Below, one piece after another: positions 3,073 through 60,614 of a stretch of DNA of 64,000 nt. This DNA is from Octopus sinensis (Eukaryota). The translations under genes and the position numbers were made by a program. The notes beneath the pieces were generated by a model, which made no database searches, had not been told where the DNA came from, and saw nothing but the letters and a program-made list of their open reading frames with translations. The DNA is taken from NCBI RefSeq assembly GCF_006345805.1, contig NC_043013.1, positions 38,006,001 through 38,070,000 of the forward strand, written 5' to 3'. Position 1 is the first letter of the stretch. Each line of letters opens with the position of its first letter.

Positions 3073-3090
3073 GAGATAGATAGATAGACT

Positions 3091-3122
<32 letters not shown>

Positions 3123-8059: not shown

Positions 8060-8090
<31 letters not shown>

Positions 8091-8091
<1 letters not shown>

Positions 8092-8832
8092 GCTCAAAAG
8101 CTACCTGGGCAGTTTTTTAGCTAGCTCCTGTAGTGGGATCTTCATTAGGCTCGTTCTCTCTCTCTCTCTCTCTCTCTTTCTCTTTCTGTTGATTGTTTTC
8201 AACCATGATCATCACCAGTACCACCACCATCGCCACCACCACTGCCATACACACACCATTCAGACTTCTGACGCCACTACCATCAGTACATTTGATTTGG
8301 CCACCTTCCTCTTCCACCACCATGACCACTGTCTTTCACATAGCTTACTTTTACCATCATCCCTCACCATCACCACCACCACCACTACCATCACCGCCGC
8401 CTCCGCTTCTATCATTACTTACAGCTCATACTATTATTATCACACCATTACCCTCATAAAAAGGCTAAATATGTGTGTTCGTTCAGTTTGTTATTGAGCA
8501 TGTTACTTCAGTGTTCGGTCCTTCCTTCTCTCATATACCCACTCTTTCTCTCACTCTTATTATTACTCCCACTACCATCATCAACACTCTCTAAATTTCC
8601 TTGTCTCTCTTTCTCTCCCTCACTTTTTCTTACTCTCTTTCTCTCTCACTCTGTCCGTCTTCGCCACTGCCCTCACCGTCACTATCCCTACTATTACTCT
8701 CATCCCGTCATGAGGAATACTAGGAGTGTCATTGAATACTGAAAAGGGGGGGGGGTCTAAGTGTGGCACACTGACGCACAGAAATAAGTTTTTGCACTTA
8801 TTTTCTTATTTTTTTTCTTCTTCTTCTTCTTC

Positions 8833-8908
<76 letters not shown>

Positions 8909-9649
8909 GCTCAAAAGCTACCTGGGCAGTTTTTTAGCTAGCTCCTGTAGTGGGATCTTCATTAGGCTCGTTCTCTCTCTCTCTCTCTCTCTCTTTCTCT
9001 TTCTGTTGATTGTTTTCAACCATGATCATCACCAGTACCACCACCATCGCCACCACTACTGCCATACACACACCATTCAGACTTCTGACGCCACTACCAT
9101 CAGTACATTTGATTTGGCCACCTTCCTCTTCCACCACCATGACCACTGTCTTTCACATAGCTTACTTTTACCATCATCCCTCACCATCACCACCACCACC
9201 ACTACCATCACCGCCGCCTCCGCTTCTATCATTACTTACAGCTCATACTATTATTATCACACCATTACCCTCATAAAAAGGCTAAATATGTGTGTTCGTT
9301 CAGTTTGTTATTGAGCATGTTACTTCAGTGTTCGGTCCCTCCTTCTCTCATATACCCACTCTTTCTCTCACTCTTATTATTACTCCCACTACCATCATCA
9401 ACACTCTCTAAATTTCCTTGTCTCTCTTTCTCTCCCTCACTTTTTCTTACTCTCTTTCTCTCTCACTCTGTCCGTCTTCGCCACTGCCCTCACCGTCACT
9501 ATCCCTACTATTACTCTCATCCCGTCATGAGGAATACTAGGAGTGTCATTGAATACTGAAAAGGGGGGGGGGTCTAAGTGTGGCACACTGACGCACAGAA
9601 ATAAGTTTTTGCACTTATTTTCTTATTTTTCTTCTTCTTCTTCTTCTTC

Positions 9650-9703
<54 letters not shown>

Positions 9704-9716
9704 TATTATTATTATT
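8091..9716 (+). repeat. Tandem duplication with 817-bp period, bounded by (ATT)n
   Basis: agctcaaaagctacc starts at 8091 and at 8908. The ORF track shows matching ORFs offset by 817 (8117/8934, 8189/9006). Confidence 0.95.
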
Positions 9717-12700
9717 CTATGTTTGACTTTTGCTTTATATTTGTACAAGTTGGCTCCAAGTCTCACCCAGAGACCTCAAGAGACAACAGGGTTGGAAGTT
9801 CATCTTGTTGTTATGCCTAGTGTGCCATATATTTGGGGGGTGGGGATGTTGTACTAATGAATGTCTAAAAAAAAAAATTTTTTTTTTTTTTTTTTTTTAA
9901 ACCGAAATTTATGGTTGTTTTAAACCTTGAGGTTACATAGAGAGTATTTTGCGTAGGATATGAGCAGTTCCCATGAGCACTATCTTTTGAACTTCTGCCA
10001 TTTTTGGGTTTCCTGGTATCTGAGTTAGGTAGCTATCAGCCCCTTTTGCTATCATTCCCAGGGCACCAATGACAACAGTATTGTTTTAGTCTTCAGCTTC
10101 CACATTTTGCTGATTTCTATTTCAAGATCTTTATATTTGCTCAGTTTTTGGTAGGTCCTGACAGATACGTTTATATCGATTGGGACAGTCATATCAATGA
10201 GGAGGCATGTTCTTTGTTTGAAGTCTTTCAATATGATGTCTGGCCTATTTGCATCTATCTTCCTGTCAGTTTGAATGGTGAAGTTCCAGAGGAGTGAGAT
10301 GTGGTCATTTTCAAGCACTGGGGGTGGTTTGTGTTCCCACCAGTTTTTTTCATGGGGCAAATCCAGGTTTTTACAGATTACCCAGTGAATATATTGTGCA
10401 GCTCTATCGTGCCTGTTGAGATACTCTGTAGGCGCTAGAAGACTGCACTTGGAGACCACATGGTCAATGGTTTCATTTTGTTGCTTGCATACACGACACG
10501 TTGGACTGCTTCTGATCTTTAATATGTTGGCCTGGTAGTTTCTTGTTGGTAGGCATTGATCTTGAGCTGCTATGATAACCCCTCTGTTTCAGATTTTAAG
10601 CCAGAGGCCATTAGCCATTGATGGGTCAGGGCTTTGTCGATATCTGCATTATTCGCTCTCTTGGGTATTTGCCGTAGAGAGGTTTTTCTTGCCATTTATT
10701 ATTCAGAATATCTAAGGCCGCAGTTTTGGCACGGGTTTTCATGCGCCTAGCTTTTTCTGTGCTTGTTTCTTGTATGTCTATCTCTAATTCCGAAATTGGT
10801 TGTATTCGGAATTCACTTAGATATTCCTTTGCCTGTTTTGTGACTGAGTATGATGCTTTCTTGTTTTCATGTTTTGAGACAAGTTTTAACATCCAGTCCT
10901 CAGAGTTTTTCAGGTAGGTGTTTAGGCCAATTGTAGCAATCTTCATTGTTATTGCCAGTTGCAAAAGACCACGGCCTCCCTCTTTTCTTGGCAGATAGAG
11001 TCGTTCTGTATCTGCCTTAGGGTGGTGCATTCTATGCATTGTCAACAGTTTCCTTATTTTTCTGTCGAGCTGACATATTTCAGTAATTGACCAGTTAACA
11101 ATATTGAAACTGTAAGTCACGACTGGTATAGCTAATGCATTGATTGCTTCGATCCTGTTTCTTGCATTCAGCTCTGTCTTGAGTATTGCTCTCACTCTTC
11201 GATAGCATTCTCTCCTGATCCTTTCCTTCATCTCTGAATGCCTTATTCCGTTCCCTTCAATTACCCCTAGGTACTTGTAGCTCTCCGCTGGGTCTAGTTC
11301 TTTTATGACATTCTGTTGGTCAAGGTTAACGTTAGATGTTTCTGTCATTTTTCCTTTGATAAAGGTAGCCTTTTCACATTTATCGATGCCGAATTGCATT
11401 CTGATGTCGTCACTGAATTGTTTGACTATCGCTAGTAAGCCCTTGAGTTGTTAATCATTTTTTGCAAAAAGCTTTAAATCATCCATGTAAACGAGATGAT
11501 TTATATTTTTATCAAACATTTTATACCCGTACTGCGCGTCATTGAGCAGCTTTGAGAGAGGTATTAAGGATAAACAAAAGAGGAGTGGTGACAGTGAGTC
11601 ACCCTGGAAAATGCCACACGAAGTTTTTACATCACCAGCATTTAGGGATTCACTGTCACTGTTCAGAGTTAGTGTGGTTCTCCATGATCTCATACTTACA
11701 GTCAAGAAGTTTCGCAGAGTTGGTGCTATCTTATACATTTCAAGGTATTTCCTAATCCAGCTATGTGGTAGGCTATCAAAAGCCTTTTTATAGTCTATCC
11801 AAGCTATTGATAAGTTTTTGTGTCGTTTGTGACAATCTTCTAAGATCATCTTATTGATGAGTAGTTGGTCTTTACAGCCGTAGGATCCACGTTTACATCC
11901 TTTCTGTTCATTAGGGAATATGCTGCTGTCTGTTAAAAAACTATAGGTATATTCCGTCAGGACAGATGTTAGAGTTTTGTACATAGTTGTTAAGCAGGTT
12001 ATGGGTCTATAGTTTTTTGGTTCATTTGTTTCTTCACTTTTTGGAAGCAGGAATGTTAACCCATTAACTAGCCAAGGAGGCATCCTACTAGGGTGTTGCA
12101 GAACATCATTGTACAGTTCTGTTAGCAGTTCATGGCTCTCTGGGAAGGCATTCAGCCAGAAGTTAGGAATTTTATCCTTTCCTGGAGACTTCCATTTGCT
12201 TGACCTCCTGAGAGCAAATCTTATATCTTCTACCTTGAAACCCTCCCACTTTTGCTCTTCTAAGGGGTCCAGTTCTGTAGATATTCTGTCAATCCAGGGG
12301 GCCTTTTCGTTGTGTGTTTTTTCTTCTGCCCAGATTTTATTCCAAAATCTCTGCACTTCTTCTTTTGATGGTACAGACCCTGCAGTAAACGCTGTTTTCC
12401 TATCTTCCTGTAAAAATTCTTGGTGTTATTTTTGAACATGTTGTTGTCCTTGAAAAATCTAACACGCTTTTCATACCTCGCTATGCGGGTAGCTTTGGCA
12501 GATACCTTTTGTTTGATGGTTTCTATGGTGGCATCAATATCAAGTATAGTTTTCATATTGTATTTTTTCAGTAATTTTTGGGTTTTTGTAGGTTTGGTAG
12601 TCTTGTGAGCCTTAAGGTTTTTCAAATATTCAATGTCAGATCTAAATACTTTAATTTGTTGTTGCAGACGCTCTTGCCAAGAAAGCTTTTTGTGGGACTG

Positions 12701-13750
12701 TTGCCGTTTTCTAATCTTTACACCACATAGGATCGTTGAGATTTTCGCGGATGCATAGTATAGGTGGTTGAGGTTTGTGATATCAACATCATTAACTGAA
12801 ATTATATCCTTAAGTGCAAGCCGGATTTTACCAATTATTTTCATGTTTTGGTTAGAGTTGCGGATTTTAGGAAGTGTATCACGCTCATCCATGCTGGTTT
12901 CTTTAATTTTCAGCCATTCAATCATGATTTGATTTTTTAGCTCATGTAGTTCTGTTGGGTCAATATTTGTGTGACTTTCTTTATCTATTTGATGCTCATC
13001 TGTCTTAGTGTTTATGATTGGTTCAGGGCGTATTTCACTTTGCCTATCACTTATACTAACTCTTTCAATCCTCTCTTCGTTTTTATCCGCCCTGGGCTGG
13101 TCTATAATCATTTCCTCTGTATTATCTTCTCTAGCTGCAGCTTCGTTCATTTTATCCGATATTGCTTGTCTAACCTGATCAATCTCTACTTCAGTCAGTA
13201 ATTTCTTTTTTATAATGTTTCTTCTAACATTGACAAGCTTGTTACTGTCTATGTAGGGTCTTACTTCAGGGTGTTTCTGTCTCCAGTTTAAGTATGCTTG
13301 TACAGTGCTAGACTTATCTGTGGGGAAATATATGGCATGGTAGAAGGCCTCGAGAACTTCTTTATTATCTTCCCTAGACCATTTTTCCTTCTTTTTCTTT
13401 TGATTATTTGGTGATGAGCATGGATGGCCATCTGTTGGAATATTCCGGTTGTGGGGTTCGTCCAGCTCCTGTGTGTTGGGAAGATTTGATCCAGTAACTG
13501 ATTTTTCAATCAGGATTTGGTTCAATTTTCGGGTACGTGGTCTTTTGTAATCCGCGCAATGACCAATGCGGTTTATTGTTTGATTTGTTGACCTTGAAGC
13601 ATGACGAGCATCCATTCTTATATTAGGAGATGGATCTGTCAGTTTAGGGTTCACTACATGTAAGCTTTGCTCATAGCGCCGCTTCTTAAGACTAGCAGAT
13701 CTATATTCGTCTGTTTTTCTTTTGTTGATAGTTTTATCTCCGGACATTTT
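9717..13750 (-). mobile_element. R4/Dong-clade non-LTR retrotransposon (family A), near full ORF, disrupted
   Basis: Myb-like KWSREDNKEVLEAF; RT KSPGKDKIPNFWL, NYRPITCL, IDYKKAFDS, FQGDSLSP, YMDDLK; CCHC knuckle; endonuclease NRPDIILKD...LIDMTVP...KLSKYKDL. The 3' end runs into (TAA)n. Contains an in-frame stop and frameshifts. Confidence 0.93.
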
Positions 13751-14029
13751 TTTTTTTCCTCCTTTCCTCCTCTTCCTTTCTTCAAGGCTTACTGTGTCTG
13801 TGTTAGTTCGAAATAATGAGAATAAAATACGGAGAAGGAAACGAAAAGAAACGGAAAAAGACGGGATCTGTTAGTTATTATTGTTATTACTATCATCTTC
13901 ACCACCATCACCATCATCAGCAACATCACCATCACCATCATCATCTTCAATGTGTAGCCACAGCCACCATCAACACTCCATTGTGTTGGAGAATGGGTGG
14001 TTAAAGAATTCATGTTCTTTGGGTCTATA

Positions 14030-16324: not shown

Positions 16325-16390
16325 CTCCTCCTCGTCATCTTCCTCCTCCTCCTCCTCATCATCATCATCATCATCATTATTATTATCATT

Positions 16391-16845
16391 GAGTGAGAGA
16401 GCAGTGCATGCCATCAAAGTGACACTGAGGTAAAATATACGAAGCCCAGTATACCCATCATGACTACCCGTCTGATAAGGGTACTCTAGACACATGCATC
16501 ACAACCATGCGCGACATGGTGATCTCATATCAAGATAAGCAGTTCGAGTAGCCAATCCTGCTCAAAAGGTCCTTAAGTAAGGATTGTTTAAGGATATTGA
16601 ACGAACCACCCATGTTTCCAAAGGTGAATTATCCAAACCTCTAAGAATTCCTTTCAGCACACGGTTATGATGCTCCCCCCACTACTTCTGCTCAAGATCA
16701 GAGATGCACATATCATCAGCCACTAAGGGACATGGTCAACTGGTTATGGTCAAACAACTGACAAGCAAATCTGTGGTAGGGAGCAGAATATTTGCTGTAG
16801 CCCATCTTTTATACCAAGACAAAGCAATGTACATGACACGATAAA
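16391..16845 (-). mobile_element. Element X (555-bp non-coding family), truncated and internally deleted copy
   Basis: Starts att|gagtgagagagcagtgcatgcc, as do the copies at 36192, 59244 and 59829. Strand is inferred from the TAA tail orientation. Confidence 0.85.
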
Positions 16846-16876
16846 TAATATTACTATAATAATATAATAAATAATA

Positions 16877-16929
<53 letters not shown>

Positions 16930-16961
16930 TAATTATAATAATAATAATAATAACAATAATA

Positions 16962-17000
<39 letters not shown>

Positions 17001-17165
17001 GGAGAACACCGGGGGACTTTTAAGGGAGAACACCGGGGGACTTTTAAGGAGAACACCGGGGGACTTTTAAGGGAGAACACCGGGGGACTTTTAAGGAGAA
17101 CACCGGGGGACTTTTAAGGGAGAACACCGGGGGACTTTTAAGGAGAACACCGGGGGACTTTTAAG
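17001..17165 (+). repeat. Seven tandem 24/23-bp repeats GGAGAACACCGGGGGACTTTTAA(G)
   Basis: Unit lengths counted as 24,23,24,23,24,23,24, starting directly after a (TAA)n run. Confidence 0.97.
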
Positions 17166-20100
17166 ATGTAAGAAGGAAAATTCAGAGCTCCGAAACCTAT
17201 CCACAAACATCGAAAACAAGGACATCCTATGGAGCCAAAGTTTACTAACAAAGAATTGGACTTATCCGAGTAAGTAATACAAATTGAAATTTATTACTAT
17301 TTTCGAAACGAAATGATGTATTTTGACTCGATATCATCTCCACCTCTAACGCAACACATGTAAACATGCGTGAAACATCACGATCATCTCCGACCCCAAC
17401 ACCATGTACAAAGGAACTACGAGAAATTAAATGCCACCGATACTATTCAACCCAAGAATAACAATCGAGCGGTACGTACATTAAACTACAACAAAAAATG
17501 TACGAAAAACTACACGTGCGAAATAATGTGACAACAGAAATAAACGGACCGGTACCCTACGAAAATGACGACCGTCAAAATAATGGGCCGGACGTTGTAC
17601 CTCATGTCCCGCAAATAAAACCCAAAAGACGTAAATGGACACGTGAGGAATACATTTCTATCTTACACGCATACTTCACAGCAGTACTCTACCCAAAAAA
17701 TGAAAATACAAACAACACATACATATAAAATATGGAAGGAAAATAATAGAGATTTAGACTTGGATACAGCAATGAACCCTAATAAATTAGCAGTACGAAG
17801 AAGATACATTCTCAACACAAAAAAAATATCAGAAATAGAAATAGAACACCTAAAAGAAAACATACACCAGGAAAATGTAGATAGAAGCCACACAACAATG
17901 CCCAATAATATAAACACTGAAACTGTAAACACGAAGACAAACGCACATTCCCAACAAACACGATGTAAACAACGAAGGGAGCCTAATGATTATGATAATA
18001 AAAAAATAAAATAATCAAGAACTAAAACCACAGAGCTCAAAATGGACCACCGACCATACCTCCCAAGAATAAAATAAACGCAATAACAACACCAATTATA
18101 AACAACATATAAACCTAGCCGTCACTGAACTAGCCACTGAAACAAAAAAAAGTGATATCACTGAACTAAATGACTTGATATACGCAGCAGCCACTGCAGC
18201 CACAAAAAGAAGCTGGATACTCACCCAAACCCGCCCAAACAGGAGTACCACCACCCAAACAAACCCTGTGGATAAATAACATCCAAAACAAAAAAAAAAA
18301 AATTAGAAAAGACCTGTCGATTCTTAATGAAATCAGCAAACAAGCAACGCTACTGAGCAACAAAAAGAGAACAAAAATGCTCCGCAAATATAACATCACA
18401 GAAAAAGATTTGCCGGAGATAAAAGAAAAGCTGAAGCAAGATATCCTTGCCAAAGCTCAAAGGATCCGCCGGTACGAGAAACGCCAACGCTTCTTTGAAC
18501 AGAACAAAAAGTTCAACTCCGACCCCAAAAAGTTCTACCAAGAACTGGGCAAAAATAAAATAGAAGTCACTGCAGCACCAACGGCAGAAGAATTGGAAGA
18601 ATTCTGGAGAGAAATATGGTCGGCGAACGAACCACCAAAAAAAAGGAGTATCAAAATAAAAACTCGGCATCTGAACAAACTTGGACCCCCATAACAACTG
18701 AAGAGGTCACCCAGGCACTGCAAAGACTAAGCAACTGGAAGGCACCTGGGCATGACAAGATCCCCAACTTCTGGTTGAAATATCTAACAGGAATGCACAA
18801 AAAGCTGGCTGAAAACTTTAACAACGTACTAGCAGAGCCAGAGACAATGCCTGAATGGCTCACGAAGGGGAAAACCATCTTAATTCCCAAATCAAATGAA
18901 ACAGAAAAACCAGAAAACTACAGACCAATAACCTGCCTCCCTACTATGTTCAAGGCATTTACTGCAGTGATATCACAAAGGCTGAACAAGCACCTGGACG
19001 AAAACAAACTGTTCCCAGAAGAGCAGAAAGGATGCCGCAAAGGCTCATATGGCTGTAAAGATCAACTAATGATTAATAAAGCCATAACTGAAGACAGCCA
19101 CAGAAAGAAGAAAGGCCTCAGTATGGCCTGGATTGACTACAAAAAGGCGTTTGATAGCATCCCCCACACATGGATCCTCGAAACACTAGCCCTTAACAAA
19201 GTAGCACCAACAATCATAAAATTCATAGAACACTCTATGAATAAATGGCAAACAGTCCTACACCTCCCAAACAAAAGAGGGACTCATGAAAACCAAAGAC
19301 ATCCCCATTAGAAGAGGAATATTCCAGGGAGATACGCTCTCTCCACTCCTTTTCTGCTTGGCACTGTCACCTCTATCTGATATGCTAAATAGAACTGGAT
19401 GTGGTTATAAATGTTACGGCAAAACGATCAGCCGCCTTTTATATATGGATGACCTAAAACTATACGCTGCAAATGACAAACAGCTGGAAACACTATTAAA
19501 GACAGTTCATGGATTTACCAAAGAAATAGATATGAAATTTGGATTAGAAAATGCGCCAAAGTAACCATGAAAAGAGGAAAACTAGTTAAGAGTAACAACA
19601 TCACACTAGATGAAGCAAATGAAATAAAAGAATTAGACCAAAGCCAAACTTACAAATACTTAGGAATCCATGAACTAGATAAGACACAACACACACAAAT
19701 GAAAGGAAAATAAAAAAAGAATATTATAGACGAGTTAGATCAATACTAAACAACAGACCTCAATGCTAAAAAACAAGATATAGGTATCAACACTTTAGCT
19801 GTCCCAGTTATAAGTTACAGCTACAAAAATCCTTAACTGGACACGAAACGAAATGAAACTGACCAAAATAGACAGGAAAACAAAAATAAATGACAGGATC
19901 TAGGATGCATCACCCAAATCTGACATAGAAAGACTATATATACAACGTATAGAAGGTGGTAGAGGCGTATACAGCTGGAAAACTACTATAAAATAACCAC
20001 CATAGGACTGCAAAAATATCTACTTCAGAAGGAAGGAAAACTGATCCAGATAGCGGCAAAACACGAGCAAAACAAAAAACTGTTCTCAGTATTTAAGGAA

Positions 20101-21132
20101 GCTGACAAATACAAACAAGAAATCATACCACCTAATAAACATGAAGAAGAAGAAGAAGAAGAAGAAGATAAACAACAAAAGAAGAAAAAAAAAAGAAGAA
20201 ACCAAAAGCTATAACAAAAAAAGAAATCCAAACTAAAAATAGAACAGCAACGAACATGATAAAACGATGGCAAGAAAAGCCCCTTCATGGTAAATACTGG
20301 ACTAAACTAAACGCAAAAGAAATAGACAAAGAAAAATCCCAGCAATGGTTGAGAAGCTCAGGACTCAAAGCAGAAACAGAGGGATTTTTAATTGCAGCAC
20401 AAGACCAAGCCTCCCCACCAGAAATTACCAAAAACATGTAATGAAAAGAAATATTACAAGTAACTGCAGAATATGTGGAGATGGACAAGAAACAATAAAT
20501 CATATTATCTCTAGCTGCCCAGTCCTGGCTAAGAAGGAATATATTCACAGACATGACAGAGTTGGAACTTACATACATTGGAAGCTATGCCAACATTATG
20601 GAATAACAACAGAAAAAAGATGGTATAGGCACACACCAGAAAAGGTCACAGAAAACGAGAAAGCAACCATACTCTGGGATATGCCGATACACAGATAGAG
20701 AAATTAGGCCAACAGACCAGATATAGTTGTCAGAGACCATGAAGAAAAAAAATGCTTTCTAATTGATGTATCAGTACCGGCAGATGACGACGTGTCTCTA
20801 AAGAAATGGAGAAACTCTCAAAATACAAAGACCTGGAAATAGAGGTAACTAGAATGTGGAATCTGAAAACAGAAACAATTCCTATCATAGTAGGTGCATT
20901 AGGCATGATAAAAAAATATTCAGACAAATACATAACAAAAACACCAGGACTTACAAACACATATAACATACAGAAAATTGCACTACTAGGCACTGCACAC
21001 ATCCTACGCAGAACACTTTCCATACAATAACCATCAGAGCATCACAACAAATCACAGCACATACCCAAGGCACACAGAGCTGCGCTCGGTAAGTGAAGTG
21101 AAAGCACGCTATAAAAATAAAACTACTGAATA
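17001..21132 (+). mobile_element. Apparently full-length R4/Dong-clade retrotransposon (family B), frameshifted, flanked by (TAA)n at both ends
   Basis: Myb-like KRRKWTREEYISILHAYF; RT KAPGHDKIPNFWL, IDYKKAFDS, FQGDTLSP, YMDDLK; CRICGDGQETINHIISSC; KLSKYKDLEIE...LLGTAHILRR. Confidence 0.93.
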
Positions 21133-21144
21133 ACAATAATAATA

Positions 21145-21181
<37 letters not shown>

Positions 21182-21185
21182 TATA

Positions 21186-21228
<43 letters not shown>

Positions 21229-21384
21229 TATTATTATTATATTATTATTATATTATTATTTATTCCTTCTTTTGCTCAGTGATGATCGGTTGAACCCTGA
21301 ATGGTTTAACTGACATCCTGTAACTTCAGATAAGCAGTACTTCCCGCAGGATATTGTTTTCTTCCCAAAGGTGTTGTCTTATGC

Positions 21385-25689: not shown

Positions 25690-25930
25690 GATATATATTT
25701 CTTTACTGCCCAGAAGGGGCTGAACATAGAGGGGGCAAACAAGGACAGACAAAGGGATTAAGTCGATTACATCGATCCCAGTGCGAAACTGGTACTTTAT
25801 TTATCGACCCCGAAAGGATGAAAGGCAAAGTCGACCTCGGCAGAATTTGAACTCAGAAAGTAACGACAGACGAAATACCGCTAAGCATTTCGCCCGGCGC
25901 GCTAACGTTTCTGCCAACTCGCCGCCTTCG
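25690..25930 (-). mobile_element. SINE family B
   Basis: atttatcgaccccgaaaggatgaaaggcaaagtcgacctcggcagaatttgaactcag...ctgccaactcgccgcc. Confidence 0.85.
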
Positions 25931-31449: not shown

Positions 31450-31690
31450 ATAAGGCAGCGAGCTGGCAGAAATGTTAGCGCGCCGGGCGAAATGCTTAGC
31501 AGTATTTCGTCTGCCGCTACGTTCTGAGTTCAAATTCCGCCGAGGTCGACTTTGCCTTTCATCCTTCCGGGGTCGATTAACTAAGTACCAGTTACGCATT
31601 GGGGTCGATATAATCGACTTAATCCGTTTGTCTGTCCTTGTTTGTCTTTTCTGTGTTTAGCCCCTTATGGGTAGTAAAGAAATAGGTGGT
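31450..31690 (+). mobile_element. SINE family B
   Basis: ggcagcgagctggcagaaatgttagc...catccttccggggtcgatt. Confidence 0.85.
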
Positions 31691-32790: not shown

Positions 32791-32830
32791 CGTTGGATAG
32801 AATGACATGCAATATTTGTAATGTACAGCT

Positions 32831-32876
32831 AAGATTAAATGCCATGAGAGCCACTGCCTGGTACTGCATCAGGGCA
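32831..32876 (-). mobile_element. Element X terminal fragment
   Basis: gccatgagagccactgcctggtactgcatcagggca then (ATT)n, identical to the end of 59244-59798. Confidence 0.8.
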
Positions 32877-32913
<37 letters not shown>

Positions 32914-32992
32914 GTTATTATTATTATTATTATTGTTGTTGTTGATGTTGTTATTATTATTATTATTGTTATTATTATTGTTGTTGTTGTTG

Positions 32993-33024
<32 letters not shown>

Positions 33025-33084
33025 GTTGTTGTTGTTGTTATATTATCATTATTATTATTGTTGTTGTTGTTATTACTATTAATA

Positions 33085-33345
33085 TCACGGGTCTACTCTA
33101 AGCCTGTGCCATAAGCGATAAGAATAGGGCATTTGTGCTAGTGATCAAGGCCTTCATAATTTTGTGGGGGTTTCCACTAGTAGCCCAAGTGAGCCTCACT
33201 CTCTGGGAGAATTTTTCATTAAAATTTAATTTTACAGTTTTCACGGTTTACACGCTCCATTTTATGCAACACTCACATTGTATTGTCTTGTATCGTCCCG
33301 AACGTGTTTTATGTGAACCCTTAATGGTTAATAAAGAAAACATCA
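33085..33345 (+). mobile_element. Probable Tx1-like 3' UTR remnant ending in (CAT)n
   Basis: Ends gtgaacccttaatggttaataaagaaaa, compared with gtgcagccctgtgtggctaataaagaaa at the 3' end of the 3124-5682 element. Confidence 0.5.
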
Positions 33346-33600: not shown

Positions 33601-33689
<89 letters not shown>

Positions 33690-33691
33690 TA

Positions 33692-35296
33692 TTCAGTAGT
33701 TTTATTTTTATAGCGTGCTTTCACTTCACTACCGAGCACAGCTCTGTGTGCCTTGGGTATGTGCTGTGATTTGTTGTGATGCTCTGATGGTTATTGTATG
33801 GAAAGTGTTCTGCGTAGGATGTGTGCAGTGCCTAGTAGTGCAATTTTCTGTATGTTATATGTGTTGATACATCAATTAGAAAGCATTTTTTTCTTCATGA
33901 TCTCTGACAACTATATCTGGTCTGTTGGCCTTAATTTCTCTATCTGTGTGTATCGGCATATCCCAGAGTATGGTTGCTTTCTCGTTTTCTGTGACCTTTT
34001 CTGGTGTGTGCCTATACCATCTTTTTTCTGTTGTTATTCCATAATGTTGGCATAGCTTCCAATGTATGTAGGTTCCAACTCTGTCATGTCTGTGAATATA
34101 TTCCTTCTTAGCCAAGACTGGGCAGCTAGAGATAATATGATTTATTGTTTCTTGTCCATCTCCACATATTCTGCAGTTACTTGTAATATTTCTTTTCATT
34201 ACATGTTTTGGTAATTTCTGGTGGGGAGGCTTTGGTCTTGTGCTGCAATTAAAAATCCCTCTGTTTCTGCTTTGAGTCCTGAGCTTCTCAACCATTGCTG
34301 GGATTTTTATTTGTCTATTTCTTTTGTGTTTAGTTTAGTCCAGTATTTACCATGAAGGGGCTTTTCTTGCCATCGTTTTATCATGGTTCGTTGCTGTTCT
34401 ATTTTTAGTTTGGATTTCATTTGTTTTATAGCTTTTGTTGTTTCTTCATCTTCTTCTTCTTCTTCGTGTTTATTAGGTGGTATGATTTCTTGTTTGTATT
34501 TGTCAGCTTCCTTAAATACTGAGAACAGTTTTTTGTTTTGCTCGTGTTTTGCCGCTATCTGGATCAGTTTTCCTTCCTTCTGAAGTAGATATTTTTGCAT
34601 TCCTATGGTGGTTATTTTATAGTAGTTTTCCAGCTGTATAAGGCCTCTACCACCTTCTATACGTTGTATATATAGTCTTTCTATGTCAGATTTTGGGTGA
34701 TGCATCCTAGATCCTGTCATTATTTTTCTTGTTTTCCTATCTATTTTGGTCAGTTCATTTCGTGCCCAGTTAAGGATATTGTAGCTGTAACTTATAACTG
34801 GGACAGCTAAAGTGTTGATACCTATTATCTTGTTTTTAGCATTGAGCTCTGTGTTTACTATTGATCTAACTCGTCTATAATATTCTTTTTTTATTTTCTC
34901 TTTCATTTGTGTGTGTTGTGTCTTATCTAGTTCATGGATTCCTAAGTATTTGTAAGTTTGGATTTGGTCTAATTCTTTTATTTCATTGGTTTTATCTAGT
35001 GTGATGTTGTTACTCTTAACTAGTTTTCCTCTTTTCATGGTTACTTGGCGCATTTTTCTAATCCAAATTTCATATCTATTTCTTTGGTAAATCCATGAAC
35101 CGTCTTTAATAGTGTTTCCAGCTGTTTGTCATTTGCAGCGTATAGTTTTAGGTCATCCATATATAAAAGGTGGCTGATCGTTTTGCCGTAACATTTATAT
35201 CCGCATCCAGTTCTATTTAGCATATCAGATAGAGGTGACAGTGCCAAGCAGAAAAGGAGTGGAGAGAGCGTGTCTCCCTGTAATATTCCTCTTCTA

Positions 35297-35297
<1 letters not shown>
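33692..35297 (-). mobile_element. 5'-truncated R4/Dong family B copy with internal deletion, (ATT)n on both sides
   Basis: Nearly identical to ~19307-21130, with a 248-aa open frame at 34307-35053. Confidence 0.93.
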
Positions 35298-35370
<73 letters not shown>

Positions 35371-35371
<1 letters not shown>

Positions 35372-35759
35372 CGTTTGACTTTTGCTTTATGTTTGTACAA
35401 GTTGGCTCCAAGTCTCACCCAGAGACCTCAAGAGACTACAGGTTGGAAGTTCACGTTGTTGTTATGCCTAGTGTGCCATATATTTGATTTTTTTGGTGTT
35501 GTACTAGTGAATGTCTAATACATAAAAAAATAAGAAAAGTTTGTTTTAAACCTTGGGATTACATAGAGAGTATTTTGCGTAGGATATGAGCAGTTCCCAA
35601 GAGCACTATCTTTTGAATTTCTGCCATTTTGGGGTTTCCTGGTATCTGAGTTAGGTAGCAATCAGTCTCTTTCGCTATCATTCCCAGGGCACCTATGACA
35701 TCAGGTATTGTTTTAGTCTTCAGCTTCCACATTTTGCTGATTTCTATTTCAAGATCTTA
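35371..35759 (-). mobile_element. R4/Dong family A 3' end
   Basis: Homologous to 9717-10130, with (ATT)n on both sides. Confidence 0.9.
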
Positions 35760-35764
35760 TATTA

Positions 35765-35813
<49 letters not shown>

Positions 35814-35818
35814 CATTT

Positions 35819-36139
35819 TATGTTTGACTTTTGCTTTACATTTTGCTCCAAGTCTCACCCAGAGACCTCAAGAGAAAGAAGTTAGAAGCTCATGTTGGTG
35901 TTATGCCTAGGGTGTCATATATTTAGTTTCGCACATAGTATTGTTCTAGAGAATGTTTAAAAAAAGAACATTAGAAAATTATGAGTTTGTTTTAAAATTT
36001 GAGATTACATAGACAGTATTTTACATTGGATATGGGCAGTTACCATGAGCACTATCATTTGAATTTCTGCCATTTTGAACTTTCTTGGTATCTGGGCATG
36101 GTAGCAATTAGCCCCTTTTGCTATCATTGCTAGGGCACA
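35819..36139 (-). mobile_element. R4/Dong family A-like 3' end, more diverged
   Basis: Homologous to 9717-10050, with (ATT)n on both sides. Confidence 0.85.
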
Positions 36140-36160
36140 TTATTATTATTATTATTATTA

Positions 36161-36191
<31 letters not shown>

Positions 36192-36732
36192 GAGAGAGAG
36201 AGCAGTTCATGCCATCAAAGTGACACTGGGGTAAAATATACGAAGCCCAGTATACCTTTCATGACTACCCGTCTGATAAGGGTACACCAGGCACATGCAT
36301 CACAAACATATGTGCGCGACACGGTGATCTCATATCAAGATTAACAGCACATGACCTTGCAGGTGGGGCCCAGTTAGAATTTTCTTCTGGTCGAGTAGCC
36401 CATCCCACTCAAAAGGTCCCTGAATAAAGATTATTAAAGGGTGTTGAGGGAACGACCCATGTTTCCAAAAGTGAATTATCCAAACCTACAAGAATTCCTT
36501 TCAACACAAGGCTATGATGCTCCCACACTACTTCTGCTCGTGGTCAGAGATGTACATATCGTCAGCCACTAAGGGACATGCTCAACTGGTTAAGGTCAAA
36601 CAACTGACAAGCAAATCTGTGGTATTGAGCAGAATATTTGCTGTAGCCCATCTTTTATACCAAAACAAAACAAAGTACACGATAACACTTCCAATCAGTT
36701 AAGATCAGAAGCCACCTGAGCCACTGCCTAGT
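36192..36732 (-). mobile_element. Element X, near-complete copy
   Basis: Homologous to 59244-59798. Confidence 0.88.
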
Positions 36733-36757
36733 AAAAAATAAACTGAAACAAGGTCAA

Positions 36758-41460: not shown

Positions 41461-41719
41461 CACACATGCATACATACATACATACATATATAAGAAATAT
41501 TGAATTTCTAAATCTCTCGTAGAGACATGTACGGTGGTGGGCGATAGAATGGTTGTATATTGTCAATCTAACAAGAACGTGACAGTAGGGGGTACATCAC
41601 CGCTGTATAGCCCTAGGAAGCATCGAACGCCTCCTGATAGCTTTGACACATTTTTTTTCCCTGTGTCCTTATATACATATACGAAGGGGAGACAAACACC
41701 CCCGGCCGCCGGAACTGCA

Positions 41720-41765
41720 TCTAGGGACACCGTGTTTCAGGATCGTTGTCCTTCATCGGCCTAGA
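41720..41765 (-). ncRNA. Type I hammerhead ribozyme motif (family 1)
   Basis: UCUAGG|CCGAUGA|AGGA-caacga-UCCU|GAAA|CACGGUG|UC|CCUAGA: 6-bp stem I, 4-bp stem II, palindromic stem III, GUC site. Confidence 0.75.
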
Positions 41766-41922: not shown

Positions 41923-41968
41923 TCTAGGCCGATGAAGGACAACGATCCCGAAACACGGTGTCCCTAGA
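41923..41968 (+). ncRNA. Type I hammerhead ribozyme motif (family 1), second copy
   Basis: Same as 41720-41765 except that stem II ends UCCC (A-C mismatch). Predicted cleavage is after C41962. Confidence 0.7.
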
Positions 41969-42146
41969 TGCAGTTCCGGCGGCCGGGGGTGTTTGTCTCC
42001 CCTTCGTATATGTATATAAGGACACAGGGAAAAAATGTGTCAAAGCTATCAGGAGGCGTTCGATGCTTCCTAGGGCTATACAGCGGTGGTGTACCCCCTA
42101 CTGTCACGTTCTTGTTAGATTGACAGTATACAACCATTCTATATAT

Positions 42147-46223: not shown

Positions 46224-46295
46224 TGCGTCGGCCGGGAGTCGAACCCGGATCGACTGCTTGGAAGGCAACTATGCTAACCGTTACACCACCGACAC
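46224..46295 (-). tRNA. trnG: tRNA-Gly (anticodon TCC)
   Basis: GTGTCGGTGGTGTAACGGTTAGCATAGTTGCCTTCCAAGCAGTCGATCCGGGTTCGACTCCCGGCCGACGCA: 72 nt, cloverleaf, intact A and B boxes. Confidence 0.93.
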
Positions 46296-57550: not shown

Positions 57551-59010
57551 AAGTGAAGGCTCCTTTTTTATCTCGTGCTTATTCTTTGCCTAAAGTATGT
57601 ATGTATGTGCGCATGTATGTGAGCATGCATGTATGTATGTGTACGTATGTCTATATGTGTGTATGCATGTACGTAAGTATGTACGTATGTATTTATGTAT
57701 GTATGTATTTATGTACGTATGTATGTATGTGCGTACGTACGTGTATGTATGTATGTATCATATGTGCGTATGTGTACATGATTGATACGTTTAGAAATAT
57801 TGTATACTTAAATGTGTGTTAGCATCTGTACGTGTTAGTTTATAACTGTACTTTAGACCTGGTGAAAGTGGCTATGCCCGTAGCCTTCACAATCTTTCTG
57901 ATATCACTGAGATTGGGGTGTTTATCTTCCTATTTAAAATGTTGCAAAACGGAGCCATAATTTGCTTTCAAACGTATAAAGAATGGCGTATATATTCGCA
58001 TTAAATATGTGATTCTTCTGTTTGGATTTTGACGCTCTTATTTTTTACATTTACATGTGAAACACCGCGTAACGTTACATTGCGATTGATTTCTTTTACG
58101 TTTGATTGTTCTGCCAGAAGAGCACACGTTTTTCACATATTAATTGAATTGAAACCAGTATATAACTCGTACATTTTATGGACTAACGATGAATGAAAAG
58201 ATAAGTTAATGCCCTGCATAATTTCGAATCAGGATCTAAAGCAAGCTTGGACAACATTTTGTGAGAAGCGGGCCATGTGAAACATACTCATCATTTGGTG
58301 GGGCCGGACTATAAAAATACTATAAAAATGTTATTGGGTTCCCTTTCAGAAATTGCTGCTGGCCTCAGTTTGTTCATGACTGATCTAAAGAGACCTTGTC
58401 GTGGGCAAAATCCCTTACTGTTTTTAGTTACAAGACTTCTTCCGGCCCTTTACATTCTGAGTTCAAGTACCACCAAAATCGATTGTAGTTTTTACCCTTC
58501 TCCGCAGCTAAGGTCTATGTAATTGATTTATACATCTTCCCTAAATTTCTATCTTTGTGCCTCTGCAAGAAGTCAATAATCACCAAATTCGAATTATCGG
58601 AATTGTTAGAGCGTTGGACAAAATGCTTTTCACTATTATGTTACGATTCTTCACATTATAAATTAAAAATTCAAAGGTGTTAATTTGGCTTTTCATCCCT
58701 GCCGGATCGATAAACAAACTGTGGCACAATTAGGCATTAGTTAATCGACGATACACTATAGTGAAATTTGTGCTTATGATTAAAAACTCAACTCAGTGTT
58801 TCAAATCTCATTTTTGTTTTTGTTTTTTTTGTTTCATGGACGAAGGTGAATGGCAGATATTTTCCCAGCTACTGGAGTTACCGAGAAAGTTTTAATCTTC
58901 TACAACATCTATGGTATTTTCCATAAGGAATAACAAAAGTTTCACTGTTGCTGCTGCTGCTGCTGCTACTACTACTACCAATACAACAAATAATAATGAT
59001 GATGATGATG

Positions 59011-59107
<97 letters not shown>

Positions 59108-59243
59108 AATAATAATAATGATAATAATAATGATAATGACAATGACAATGAAAATATTATTTTCTCTTGGAAAACACCACCGATGTTGTGAAAGAGTATT
59201 ATTATTGTTTATTATTATTATTATAATTATTATTATTATTATT

Positions 59244-59797
59244 GAGTGAGAGAGCTGTTCATGCCATCAAAGTGACACTGGGGTAAAATATACGAAGCCC
59301 AATATACCCATCACGACTACCCGTCTGATAAAGGTACACCAGGCACATGCATCACAAACATATGTGCGCGACATGGTGATCTCATATCAAGATAAACAGC
59401 ACATGACCTTGCAGGTGGGTCCCAGTTAGAATTTTCTTCAGGTTGAGTAGCCCATCCCGCTCAAACGGTCCCTGAATAAGGGTTGTTTAAGGATGTTGAA
59501 AGAACCACCCATGTTTCCAGAGGTGAATTATTCAAACCCCAAAGAATCCCTCTCAACACATGGCTATGATGCTCCCCCACTACTTCTGCTCGTGATCAGA
59601 GATGCACATATCGTCAGCCACTAAGGGACATGCTCAACTGGTTAAGGTCAAACAACTGACAAGCAAATCTGTGGTATTGAGCAGAATATTTGCTGTAGCC
59701 CATCTTTTATACCAAGACAAAACAATGTACATGATAACACTTCCAATCAGTTAAGATCAGAAGCCATGAGAGCCACTGCCTGGTACTGCATCAGGGC

Positions 59798-59798
<1 letters not shown>
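59244..59798 (-). mobile_element. Element X, complete 555-bp copy
   Basis: (att)n|gagtgagagagc...ctgcatcagggca|t(tta)n. Confidence 0.9.
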
Positions 59799-59828
<30 letters not shown>

Positions 59829-60295
59829 GAGTGAGAGAGCAGTGCATGCCATCAAAGTGACACTGGCGTAGAACATACGAAGCCCAGTATACCCATCATG
59901 ACTACCCGTCTGATAAGGGTACACTAGGTACATGCATCACAACCATATGTGCAAGACATGGTGATCTTATATCAAGATAAACAGCCCATGACCTTGCAGG
60001 TGGGGCCCAGTTAGAATTTTCTTCCGGTCCAGTAACCCATCCCGTTCAAAAGATCTCTGAATAAGGGTTATTTAAGGATGTTGAACGAAACACCTTATGT
60101 TTCCACAGGTGATTTATTCAAATCTCAAAGAATCCCTCTTAACACATGGCTATGATGCTCCCCCACTATTTCTGCTCGAGATCAGAGATGCGTAGTCCAT
60201 CTTTTACACCAAGACAAACCAATGTACATGATAACACTTGCAATCAGTTGAGAACAGAAGCCACGAGAACCACTGCCTGCTACTGCATCAGGGCA
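59829..60295 (-). mobile_element. Element X, copy with ~90-bp internal deletion
   Basis: Same two termini as 59244-59798, separated from it by ~30 bp of (ATT)n. Confidence 0.88.
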
Positions 60296-60343
60296 CTTAT
60301 CATTATTATTATTATCATTATCATCATCATCATCATCATCATT

Positions 60344-60386
<43 letters not shown>

Positions 60387-60402
60387 TTATCATTATTATT
60401 AT

Positions 60403-60614
60403 TTTCTTTTTATCACAACTTTTGTTGGAACCTCTCTGGTCTTGCATGCGTATCGGGCTTGCTACCTGCAGCCTAGGGCACTATGCTGTCCATTCTTTTT
60501 CACCTATCTAATAGTTTCCTGATTATTTTTGCTGTGCCAGAGACAAACATTTTATAAGGATTCTACTAGGCACTCTGTTTCAATCTAACAGTTCTACTGG
60601 GCACTCTATGCCAA
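60403..60614 (-). mobile_element. 3' end of a third R4/Dong family (family C)
   Basis: Minus strand encodes ...SGTAKIIRKLLDR*, compared with LLGTAHILRRTLSIQ* in family B. Short UTR, (ATT)n on both sides. Confidence 0.65.

What the first reader, a model, noticed from the sequence alone, without database searches (positions are those of the whole stretch)
59244..60295. Element X: a 555-bp non-coding element with fixed ends, no tRNA head, and (TAA)n specificity
Seen: five copies (16391, 32831, 36192, 59244, 59829). One end is always (att)n|gagtgagagagc, and where complete the other is ctgcatcagggca|(tta)n. I find no TIR, no clear A/B box, no long ORF, and no similarity to the 3' ends of Dong families A-C. 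Established: Dong/R4 elements insert into TAA repeats. Inference: X is a non-autonomous partner of a TAA-specific endonuclease, with minus as the sense strand. Its fixed 5' end must come from something other than a tRNA promoter. The first ~56 nt can pair extensively (ccaggcagt/actgattgg, ggc/gct, gat-g-cag/ctgatc) but do not match a canonical hammerhead or HDV ribozyme.
Basis: partly seen in the sequence, partly recalled or inferred. Interest (0 to 1): 0.8.

Follow-up and report, generated by a model that had tools for sequence, protein, structure and literature searches.

The report
TAA-repeat-specific non-coding octopus retroposon
Element X is a real 555-bp non-coding mobile element of octopus genomes that always sits in one orientation inside (TAA)n microsatellites, most likely copied there by the Dong-type LINEs that use the same target; it is an ordinary kind of genomic parasite, and what defines its sharp 5' end is still unknown.

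Summary
The window, from an Octopus-type cephalopod genome, carries five same-orientation copies of a 555-bp non-coding repeat. One end, GAGTGAGAGAGC, always abuts (ATT)n. The other, CTGCATCAGGGCA, abuts (TTA)n in every copy that keeps it. More copies turned up through spurious gene models of Octopus bimaculoides and three Logan contigs; one contig holds two tandem copies, 69-74% identical to X, with the same ends and flanks.

X has no ORF, terminal inverted repeat, tRNA, A/B-box pair or Rfam match, and no similarity to the Dong-type LINEs nearby. Minus is the likelier sense strand. The CTC|AAT junction keeps one phase in 6/6 copies, while the TGCCC junction varies in phase and carries extra bases. 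X also shares the orientation of Dong elements relative to the TAA strand. Truncated copies exist at both ends, so polarity is not proven.

The ribozyme idea is not supported. The first 76 nt fold no better than shuffles. A weak HDV-like candidate matches chance and is not conserved.

Best reading: a non-autonomous retroposon inserted by target-primed reverse transcription into TAA repeats by Dong-type machinery. Its 5' end reflects a defined RNA 5' end of unknown origin. Modest interest.

The parts
59244..59798 (-). X copy, full length (555 bp). Minus-sense 5' end TGCCCTGATGCAGT at 59798-59785; 3' end GCTCTCTCACTC at 59255-59244.
59829..60295 (-). X copy with both ends intact and an 89-nt internal deletion (minus-sense nt 105-193). 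It lies in tandem upstream of the 59244 copy and is 90% identical to it.
36192..36733 (-). X copy lacking the first 13 nt of the minus-sense 5' end. It heads a same-orientation chain of TAA-flanked elements (X, two Dong A 3' fragments, Dong C).
16391..16841 (-). X copy lacking the first ~59 nt (minus sense), with a 42-nt internal deletion. Its 3' end abuts an (ATC/ATT)n repeat. Its truncated 5' end abuts an oppositely oriented (AAT)n run that precedes Dong C.
32813..32876 (-). 'Head-only' fragment: minus-sense nt 1 to about 61 (possibly 76 with a deletion). It is preceded by a long (TAA/CAA)n repeat and followed by unrelated SINE-like sequence.
59785..59798 (-). 5'-terminal 14-mer TGCCCTGATGCAGT. 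It is identical in 3 window copies and in the 69%-identical Logan copy L005a, where it is the longest identical run of the whole alignment.
59739..59764 (-). The only recurrent predicted hairpin of the head (minus-sense nt 35-60, 10 bp with 3 G-U pairs). It is kept mostly through one-sided changes, with no compensatory changes.
59799..59828 (-). (TAA)n spacer between the tandem copies. It is the tail of the 59829 copy and the 5' flank of the 59244 copy.
59198..59243 (-). (TAA)n-type repeat directly 3' of the 59244 copy; the junction reads CTC|AAT.
60296..60403 (-). Degenerate (TAA/GAT)n repeat 5' of the 59829 copy.
36139..36191 (-). (TAA)n 3' of the 36192 copy, followed by a 5'-truncated Dong A fragment.
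32877..33085 (-). (TAA/CAA)n repeat 5' of the head-only fragment.
9717..14025 (-). Context: Dong A, an RLE-type LINE flanked by (TAA)n on both sides. It has RT ORFs and a C-terminal PD-(D/E)xK nuclease motif; among solved structures its RT is closest to R2. Candidate source of the machinery. No sequence is shared with X.
17001..21134 (+). Context: Dong C, a second RLE-type LINE family, with (TAA)n on both sides and seven 23-bp repeats at its 5' end. A 94%-identical 5'-truncated copy lies at 33686-35296 (-).

Best explanation
X is a family of non-autonomous, non-coding non-LTR retroposons found in octopods.

Proposed mechanism (inferred):
- The minus strand of the window is the RNA sense strand: 5'-UGCCCUGAUGCAGU ... 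GCUCUCUCACUC-(UAA)n-3'.
- An RLE-type, TAA-repeat-specific LINE of the Dong/R4 kind nicks a (TAA)n microsatellite. Two such families sit in this window.
- The (UAA)n end of X RNA pairs with the nicked repeat and is reverse-transcribed in place (target-primed reverse transcription).
- Every copy therefore lies in one orientation inside a TAA repeat. Its own tail becomes a new target, which gives tandem pairs and head-to-tail chains.
- Recognition appears to need little more than the (UAA)n end, because X shares no 3' sequence with the Dong families seen here.
- The sharp 5' end reflects a defined 5' end of the RNA, from a transcription start or an RNA-processing event at or next to T1. The cDNA end is then joined to the upstream repeat with a few extra bases.

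Shown: the anatomy, the strand-specific target association, the recurrence in a second genome, and the absence of coding, pol III or known ribozyme features.

Inferred: the LINE partner, the polarity and the origin of the 5' end.
For: - Five copies with fixed ends, all abutting TAA-type repeats at base resolution although such repeats cover only 2.7% of the window.
- The same organisation in an independent genome: Logan contig L005 carries two tandem copies, 69% and 74% identical to X, reading (ATT)n|GAGTGG...CTGCATCAGGGCA|(TTA)n|GAGTAG....
- At least ten spurious gene models or ORFs of Octopus bimaculoides and Logan runs derive from X.
- Polarity, junctions: the CTC|AAT junction has the same phase in 6/6 copies. 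The other junction reads ...TAAA|T...TAAG|T...AATA|T...ATAA|T...ACTA|T, as expected of a 5' junction made anew at each insertion.
- Polarity, orientation: X minus strand and Dong sense strand both read (TAA)n in their flanks, and X heads a chain X-(TAA)n-DongA-(TAA)n-DongA-(TAA)n-DongC.
- Window copies 36192 and 16391 keep the 3' end and lack 13 and 59 nt at the 5' end. One O. bimaculoides copy (P0125) stops about 95 nt in and is followed by a run of Ile codons (poly-I in the peptide), consistent with (ATT)n.
- The LINEs are RLE-type: RT closest to R2 among solved structures, a PD...D...K motif, and TAA on both sides. Bombyx Dong inserts in (TAA)n (PMC3774820).
- At least five unrelated sequences in the window end directly at (TAA)n in this polarity: Dong A, Dong C, X, element D and antisense SINE heads. 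This fits tail-based, relaxed recognition.
- X is not a pol III SINE: no tRNA or Rfam head, no A/B boxes, and T4 runs at nt 77 and 511 of the sense strand.
Against: - No autonomous element sharing X's 5' or 3' end was found. X shows no nucleotide or translated similarity to Dong A or Dong C.
- Copies that keep the minus-sense 5' end but lack the 3' part also exist: 32813-32876, L003h (nt 4-64), L003a (2-470) and L004 (4-182). They are about as many as the 5'-truncated ones. Read on the plus strand they would look like classic 5' truncations.
- Most truncated ends do not abut TAA repeats.
- Some O. bimaculoides copies have only short or degenerate TAA remnants at the 5' flank. These flanks come from gene models and may be spliced.
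- Only 11-13 copies could be examined.
- No empty target site and no transcript data are available.
Confidence: 0.6

Rival explanations
1. SIDE-like origin with a self-cleaving 5' end. X would be an internally deleted derivative of an unseen Dong-family LINE, keeping its 5' UTR and last ~85 nt. Its 5' end would be cut from a (UAA)n-X co-transcript by a ribozyme, as in Bombyx Dong and the R2 SIDEs.
For: - Bombyx Dong's 5' end is an HDV-like ribozyme that cleaves exactly at the (UAA)n/element junction, and R2 SIDEs keep only the ribozyme plus 3' UTR (PMC3774820).
- X lives in repeats without an obvious promoter.
- The extreme 5' 14-mer is the best-conserved stretch between X and the 69%-identical L005a.
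- In Logan contig L003, X-like nt 1-470 is followed, in the same orientation, by the C-terminal RLE-coding part of a Dong-type ORF, collinear with Dong A nt 3601-4088 (tblastn E from 3e-5 to 9e-3).
Against: - No Rfam ribozyme family matches, even in a 123-nt search with lax filters.
- My HDV-fold descriptor recovers the CPEB3 control. In X it gives only a weak candidate (P1 nt 2-7/31-36 with a mismatch, no stable P2).
- Such hits arise in 25% of shuffles and at many internal positions, and are absent from L005a, L003a and L005b.
- The R2 core CCUCCUCGUGG is absent.
- The head is no more stable than shuffles and shows no covariation.
- The L003 junction contains TTAATAATTT. It may simply be the usual chain X-(TAA)2-truncated Dong with a shrunken repeat. 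L004 shows an X piece next to an unrelated LINE-B fragment.
- X's last 90 nt are not similar to the L003 continuation.
Confidence: 0.15
2. Plus strand is the sense strand. X would be a retroposon 5'-GAGUGAGAGAGC...CUGCAUCAGGGCA-(UUA)n-3', mobilised by a LINE that integrates in the opposite orientation relative to the repeat.
For: - Four copies keep the ...CAGGGCA end and lack variable amounts of the other side (about 491, 480, 373 and 85 nt). On the plus strand this is the classic 5'-truncation series.
- tRNA-SINE heads in the window abut TAA-type repeats in both orientations.
Against: - The element/(TTA)n junction varies in phase with 0-2 extra bases. That should not happen if the repeat were copied from the RNA. 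The other junction is constant in 6/6 copies.
- The orientation is opposite to every Dong element seen.
- A U-rich tail is unusual.
- Three of the ten pairs of the recurrent hairpin are G-U and would be A-C mismatches in plus-strand RNA.
- Three or four copies are truncated from the ...CAGGGCA side.
Confidence: 0.12
3. The first ~60-76 nt are a small-RNA unit of unknown type, ended by the T4 run at nt 77, that acts as a SINE-like head. The head-only copies would come from reverse transcriptase jumping from the 5' end of one template to the 3' end of this small RNA, as in U6/L1 chimeras.
For: - Two independent head-only pieces of similar length sit next to the upstream repeat: window 32813-32876, and L003h at nt 4-64 directly 5' of a full head.
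- A T3-T4 run at nt 75-80 is present in all seven copies that cover it, as T4 in four.
- tRNA-SINE head-only pieces also flank TAA repeats.
Against: - No match to any Rfam small RNA.
- No A/B boxes.
- No stable or covarying fold.
- A pol III unit ended at nt 77 could not make the 555-nt RNA.
- Two cases may be deletions.
Confidence: 0.08
4. X moves or spreads at the DNA level: a TIR-less transposon with a TAA/TTA target, or amplification by unequal exchange between microsatellites.
For: - Both ends are sharp.
- Truncations occur on both sides in similar numbers.
- Tandem pairs separated by the repeat occur in two genomes.
Against: - No TIR.
- The ends do not fit Helitron (5' TC / 3' CTRR) or Harbinger ends on either strand.
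- Dispersed copies are 83-92% identical and sit next to different neighbours.
- The tandem copies are 10% diverged with a private deletion, so they are not a recent duplication.
- The two junctions behave asymmetrically.
Confidence: 0.05

Closest known systems
R2 SIDEs (short internally deleted elements of Drosophila; Eickbush and Eickbush 2012, as described in PMC3774820)
   Same: Short non-coding passengers of a site-specific RLE-type LINE. They share the LINE's target and orientation and have a precise 5' end and a precise 3' end.
   Different: SIDEs visibly share the R2 ribozyme and the R2 3' UTR. X shares nothing detectable with the Dong families at hand and has no recognisable ribozyme.
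Dong of Bombyx mori and the R4 clade (autonomous, (TAA)n-specific)
   Same: Insertion inside (TAA)n with the sense strand reading TAA, and a sharp 5' junction with the repeat (PMC3774820). The window's own Dong-like LINEs have the same flanks.
   Different: X has no ORF. Dong's 5' end is an experimentally active HDV-like ribozyme, and none is detectable in X.
Classical pol III SINEs, including the tRNA-derived octopus SINE present in this window (for example 25699-25930 and 31452-31685)
   Same: Short, non-coding, LINE-dependent, multi-copy.
   Different: X has no tRNA, 5S, 7SL or snRNA head and no A/B boxes, and its sense strand has internal T4 runs. The window's tRNA SINE inserts with ordinary target-site duplications outside repeats.
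Drosophila I factor (LINE ending in (TAA)n; cited in PMC3747384)
   Same: A (TAA)n 3' tail copied by or slipped on by the reverse transcriptase.
   Different: The I factor is autonomous and carries the repeat only at its 3' end. X has TAA repeats on the 5' side too, in 6-7 of 8 full 5' ends.
U6/L1 chimeric retro-copies (template switching of LINE reverse transcriptase; from my own knowledge, not checked here)
   Same: A possible model for the head-only pieces that sit 5' of another retro-copy (L003h + L003a).
   Different: No small RNA corresponding to the X head is known. Only two cases were seen.

Membership tests
Non-autonomous partner of a site-specific LINE (SIDE-like) | No coding capacity | tested here: met
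   The longest stop-to-stop frame in any copy is 75 aa, and no frame is conserved between copies.
Non-autonomous partner of a site-specific LINE (SIDE-like) | Same target sequence and same orientation as the autonomous LINE | tested here: met
   X minus strand and Dong A/C sense strands are all flanked by (TAA)n. They also form a head-to-tail chain at 33686-36733.
Non-autonomous partner of a site-specific LINE (SIDE-like) | 3' end shared with the LINE's 3' UTR | tested here: not met
   X ends ...GCTCTCTCACTC, Dong A ends ...GTCAAACATAG and Dong C ends ...CTGAATAAC. BLAST (word 7) and nhmmer find no similarity. Only the two or three LINE families in the window could be compared.
Non-autonomous partner of a site-specific LINE (SIDE-like) | 5' end shared with the LINE (ribozyme or 5' UTR) | tested here: inconclusive
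   The 5' ends of Dong A and Dong C are unrelated to the X head. L003 shows X-like nt 1-470 joined to a Dong C-terminal coding part, but a contracted TAA chain explains this equally well.
Retroposon made by target-primed reverse transcription | Intact 3' ends with variable 5' truncation | tested here: inconclusive
   Copies 36192 (-13), 16391 (-59) and P0125 (about -95) fit. Four copies lack the 3' part instead.
Retroposon made by target-primed reverse transcription | Constant 3' junction and variable 5' junction with extra bases | tested here: met
   CTC|AAT in 6/6 copies. The 5' junctions differ in phase and carry an extra A or G.
Pol III SINE | Head derived from tRNA, 5S, 7SL or snRNA with an internal promoter | tested here: not met
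   ARAGORN finds none. Rfam finds none at E<=10 in 1351-nt and 123-nt searches. There is no A-box/B-box pair.
Pol III SINE | Sense strand free of T4 terminators | tested here: not met
   TTTT at nt 77 and 511 of the minus sense, and at nt 189 and 462 of the plus sense.
HDV-like self-cleaving ribozyme at the 5' end (as in Dong, R4, R2) | Nested double pseudoknot (P1, P2, P3, P1.1) starting at the cleavage site, kept among relatives | tested here: not met
   The descriptor was validated on the CPEB3 ribozyme. The weak hit in window copies matches a 25% shuffle background. There are no hits in L005a, L003a or L005b. The R2 core motif is absent, and Rfam HDV-type models are silent. The octopus Dong 5' ends also gave no hit, so the test has limited power.
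Hammerhead ribozyme / retrozyme | CUGANGA ... GAAA core with three stems | tested here: not met
   The head has CUGAUGC (A9 replaced by C) and GAAG. No Rfam hammerhead, twister, pistol or hatchet match.
DNA transposon / MITE (PIF-Harbinger, TAA or TTA target) | Terminal inverted repeats | tested here: not met
   The best local alignment of the two 60-nt ends scores 6, against a shuffle mean of 6.5.
Helitron | 5' TC, 3' CTRR with a subterminal hairpin, inserted between A and T | tested here: not met
   The ends are TGCCC...CACTC (minus) or GAGTG...GGGCA (plus).
Described repeat family (Repbase/Dfam) | Match to a curated consensus | not testable with these tools
   No repeat library is available. 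Paper searches found no description.

The most novel reading that the evidence does not exclude
The X head (conserved 5'-terminal 14-mer UGCCCUGAUGCAGU, first ~60-76 nt, recurring as head-only copies) could be a new kind of 5'-end-defining RNA module. It might be a self-cleaving or nuclease-guiding motif unlike HDV-like and hammerhead ribozymes, or a new small-RNA-type head. It would do for a TAA-repeat passenger what the HDV-like ribozyme does for Dong.
Probability: 0.1. Interest if true: 0.7.

Novelty: new member of a known kind. Interest (0 to 1): 0.3.

Why it matters
Microsatellite-specific LINEs such as Dong are known. I found no description of short non-coding passengers that ride on them, though no repeat library could be checked.

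X offers a clean case in three respects:
- It has two sharp ends.
- It has a strict orientation within the repeat.
- It shares no detectable 3' sequence with the LINEs present, which suggests that a (UAA)n end alone may be enough for mobilisation.

Such elements, together with Dong, would help explain why TAA repeats in octopus genomes are long, numerous and packed with head-to-tail insertions.

X is also a practical annotation issue. At least ten 'uncharacterized proteins' or ORFs of Octopus bimaculoides and of Logan assemblies are spurious frames inside X copies.

The one open question of wider interest is how an element without a pol III head or a recognisable ribozyme obtains a reproducible 5' end.

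Tried and rejected
Searches that found nothing or could not go further:
- Two scans of JGI metagenome contigs, with an invariant X 21-mer and with a gapped head pattern, returned nothing.
- Exact look-up of ten window ORFs in the protein collection found none. No Octopus assembly could be reached.
- O. bimaculoides hits come from UniRef only, without contigs.

Structure and motif tests that were negative:
- Rfam on the whole window, on the pair of copies and on the head alone gave only chance-level hits.
- The HDV-like descriptor search was at background level and not conserved.
- The octopus Dong A and Dong C 5' ends gave no hit either, so they could not serve as positive controls.
- The R2 ribozyme core motif search was negative.
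- I considered a C/D-box snoRNA reading of UGAUGC...CUGA and dropped it. There is no terminal stem, the C box is imperfect, and Rfam gives no support.
- The tRNA cloverleaf and A/B-box reading was rejected.

Similarity tests that were negative:
- Translated comparison of X pieces with Dong A and Dong C gave nothing significant.
- X's last 90 nt are not similar to the Dong-like continuation of L003.
- P0128 and P0132 from the representative search are unrelated tandem-repeat ORFs.

Other leads dropped:
- The inverted repeats around the tandem pair are just oppositely oriented microsatellites.
- The accession search for the Logan runs gave no paper, so their species and library type are unknown.
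Full report
**What is there**

The window is AT-rich (38% GC), full of microsatellites and LINE/SINE debris. An RT ORF finds its best named relatives in Argonauta hians and Acanthosepion pharaonis. Frames inside X itself match 'uncharacterized proteins' of Octopus bimaculoides at 77-95%. The source is therefore an octopod, O. bimaculoides or a close relative.

BLAST and a profile HMM built from the copies find exactly five copies of X, all in one orientation:
- 59244-59798: full length, 555 bp.
- 59829-60295: both ends present, with an 89-nt internal deletion.
- 36192-36733: lacks 13 nt at the right end.
- 16391-16841: lacks about 59 nt at the right end.
- 32813-32876: about 60 nt of the right end only.

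Among the four long copies, the other three are 90-92% identical to 59244 over aligned columns (BLAST gives 83% for 16391 once its deletions are counted). The two end motifs are far above chance.

**Ends and flanks**

On the + strand every left end reads (ATT)n|GAGTGAGAGAGC. Every intact right end reads CTGCATCAGGGCA|(TTA)n. TAA-type runs cover only 2.7% of the window in 31 runs, so exact adjacency of seven ends to such runs is not chance.

X has:
- no open frame of 76 aa or more between stops;
- no terminal inverted repeat;
- no tRNA;
- no A/B-box pair;
- no Rfam match, even when only the 123-nt head region is searched with lax filters;
- no nucleotide or translated similarity to the LINEs in the window.

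**More copies from elsewhere**

No Octopus assembly is reachable and two metagenome scans were empty. I therefore used X's accidental open frames as protein queries. They recover at least seven O. bimaculoides UniRef entries, one unnamed MetaClust entry and three Logan ORFs, all spurious frames on X copies. The three Logan contigs could be fetched (L003-L005).

L005 carries two tandem copies that are only 69% and 74% identical to X yet have the same architecture: (ATT)n|GAGTGG...CTGCATCAGGGCA|(TTA)n|GAGTAG....

The peptides P0124, P0127, P0129, P0130 and P0134 all run to the codons of ...TGCATCAGGGCA and diverge or stop right after.

The TGCCC end is therefore a true terminus. The family is at least genus-wide. 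The species of the Logan runs is unknown.

**Which strand is the RNA?**

- RT domains, closest to R2 among solved structures.
- A C-terminal ...RPDI..D...LID..VP.D...KYKDLE... nuclease motif.
- (TAA)n on both sides in their sense orientation.

X's minus strand has the same relation to the repeat. X 36192 heads a chain X-(TAA)n-Dong A fragment-(TAA)n-Dong A fragment-(TAA)n-Dong C.

The junctions behave asymmetrically. ...CTC|AAT has one phase in 6/6 copies from two genomes. The TGCCC junction reads TAAA|, TAAG|, AATA|, ATAA| or ACTA|. A constant junction is expected where priming starts or where the repeat is part of the RNA. A variable junction with extra bases is expected at the 5' end of a target-primed insertion. 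These points favour minus as sense, at about 0.75.

Truncation does not settle the matter. Copies 36192, 16391 and the P0125 copy lose the minus-sense 5' end. Copies 32813-32876, L003h (nt 4-64), L003a (nt 2-470) and L004 (nt 4-182) lose the 3' part. Most broken ends do not abut TAA.

**The 5' end**

The literature makes the ribozyme idea reasonable. Bombyx Dong's 5' end is an HDV-like ribozyme that cleaves exactly at the (UAA)n/Dong junction, and R2 SIDEs are ribozyme plus 3' UTR (PMC3774820). I tested it in several ways:
- Rfam is silent.
- A descriptor for the HDV-like fold, checked on the cellular CPEB3 ribozyme, finds only a weak candidate in the window copies: P1 nt 2-7/31-36 with a mismatch, L3 CAGUGGC, and no consistent P2.
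- Comparable hits occur in 25% of dinucleotide shuffles for the same three start positions, and at dozens of internal positions of X.
- None occurs in L005a, L003a or L005b.
- The conserved R2 core CCUCCUCGUGG (PMC5035012) is absent.
- Heads of 69-76 nt are no more stable than shuffles, with z from -1.8 to +1.2.
- RNAalifold on five heads finds one recurrent hairpin (nt 35-60) with one-sided changes only and an unfavourable (positive) covariation term.

The ribozyme idea is therefore unsupported, though not excluded. The octopus Dong 5' ends were also silent in these tests, so I had no local positive control.

What remains:
- The terminal 14 nt TGCCCTGATGCAGT are the longest identical run between X and L005a. 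They are not shared with any other element of the window.
- T4 runs at nt 77 and 511 argue against pol III transcription of the full unit.
- Two head-only pieces of about 60-76 nt sit directly after the upstream repeat.

I read the sharp 5' end as a defined RNA 5' end, from a start site or a processing event. The mechanism is unknown.

**Link to Dong**

In L003 the X-like nt 1-470 are followed, in the same orientation, by the C-terminal RLE-coding part of a Dong-type ORF, collinear with Dong A nt 3601-4088. An internally deleted Dong or a template-switch chimera would look like this.

However, the junction contains TTAATAATTT, so an ordinary X-(TAA)2-truncated Dong chain fits as well. L004 shows an X piece next to an unrelated LINE-B fragment. 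X's last 90 nt do not match the L003 continuation. I treat this as a lead, not as evidence.

Since X shares no 3' sequence with Dong A or Dong C, and at least five unrelated sequences end at (TAA)n in this polarity, tail-based recognition is the simplest inference.

**Verdict**

X is a real, discrete, non-coding, TAA-repeat-specific element. It is best explained as a non-autonomous retroposon riding on Dong-type LINEs (confidence 0.6).

It works like an R2 SIDE or a SINE. It fails the defining tests of both: no shared LINE ends were found, and it has no pol III head. I could not check Repbase or Dfam.

Novelty: a new member of a known kind. Interest is modest and rests mainly on the unexplained 5' end.

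Noticed in passing
window 8047-8901 and 8863-9716: A 99% identical tandem duplication with a period of about 816 bp. It contains 'element D', about 740 bp of purine-rich, low-complexity, non-coding sequence. Each copy starts after (TAA)n(GAA)n and ends ...GCTTTTGAGC|(TAA)n in the Dong/X polarity. It may be another TAA-specific passenger or just a segmental duplication.
   Followed up: partly
window 7947-8045: Two tRNA-SINE head fragments face each other as a palindrome (GGCGAGTTGGCAGAGTCGTTAGCA...TGCTAACGACTCTGCCAACTCGC), each preceded by a TAA-type repeat. Other SINE heads abut TAA repeats directly at 7549 and 14142. Head-only pieces next to TAA repeats are therefore not peculiar to X.
   Followed up: partly
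window 25699-25930 and 31452-31685: A tRNA-derived SINE of about 230 bp, with the head GGCGAGTTGGCAGAA...GAGTTCAAATTC, and many copies in the window. Full copies have ordinary target-site duplications (for example the 15-bp GATGAAATAGATATA) and no TAA tail, so a different LINE moves it.
   Followed up: partly
window 2500-5700 (-) and 14373-16330 (+): The LINE families here (RVT_1 plus zf-RVT) are not Dong-type. Relatives in other cephalopods carry an Exo_endo_phos (APE) domain. The + copy ends with an AATAAA signal followed by a (CCT)n(CAT)n(ATT)n repeat, into whose opposite strand X 16391 is inserted.
   Followed up: partly
window 17001-17165: Seven copies of a 23-bp unit (GGAGAACACCGGGGGACTTTTAAG) lie directly after an (AAT)n run. 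They appear to be the 5' end of the Dong C element.
   Followed up: no
window 16844-17000, 21129-21260, 58989-59243: Places where an (AAT)n run and an (ATT)n run meet or face each other on the same strand. They coincide with oppositely oriented TAA-specific insertions.
   Followed up: no
window 46224-46295 (-): A tRNA-Gly(TCC) gene or pseudogene scoring 58 bits in Rfam. It is the only Rfam hit above threshold in the window and lies among SINE copies.
   Followed up: no
UniRef A0A0L8G4R8, A0A0L8GKS7, A0A0L8I5U5, A0A0L8FGT8, A0A0L8HKP9, A0A0L8HJ33, A0A0L8FNA5, A0A0L8HAP1, A0A0L8H6S8: These 'uncharacterized proteins' of Octopus bimaculoides (50-117 aa) are accidental open frames on the plus strand of X copies. 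They are annotation artefacts.
   Followed up: yes
locus L003 1-537 (Logan SRR11869384): The C-terminal RLE-coding part of a Dong-type ORF (...IPINVGALG...LQKTALFGT...), with frameshifts. It lies directly 3' (minus sense) of an X-like copy that lacks its last ~85 nt, with only TTAATAATTT between them.
   Followed up: partly
window 41714-41727 (-) and 41961-41974 (+): An inverted pair of TCCCTAGATGCAGT, three mismatches from the X 5' 14-mer. It probably marks the ends of an unrelated inverted repeat.
   Followed up: no
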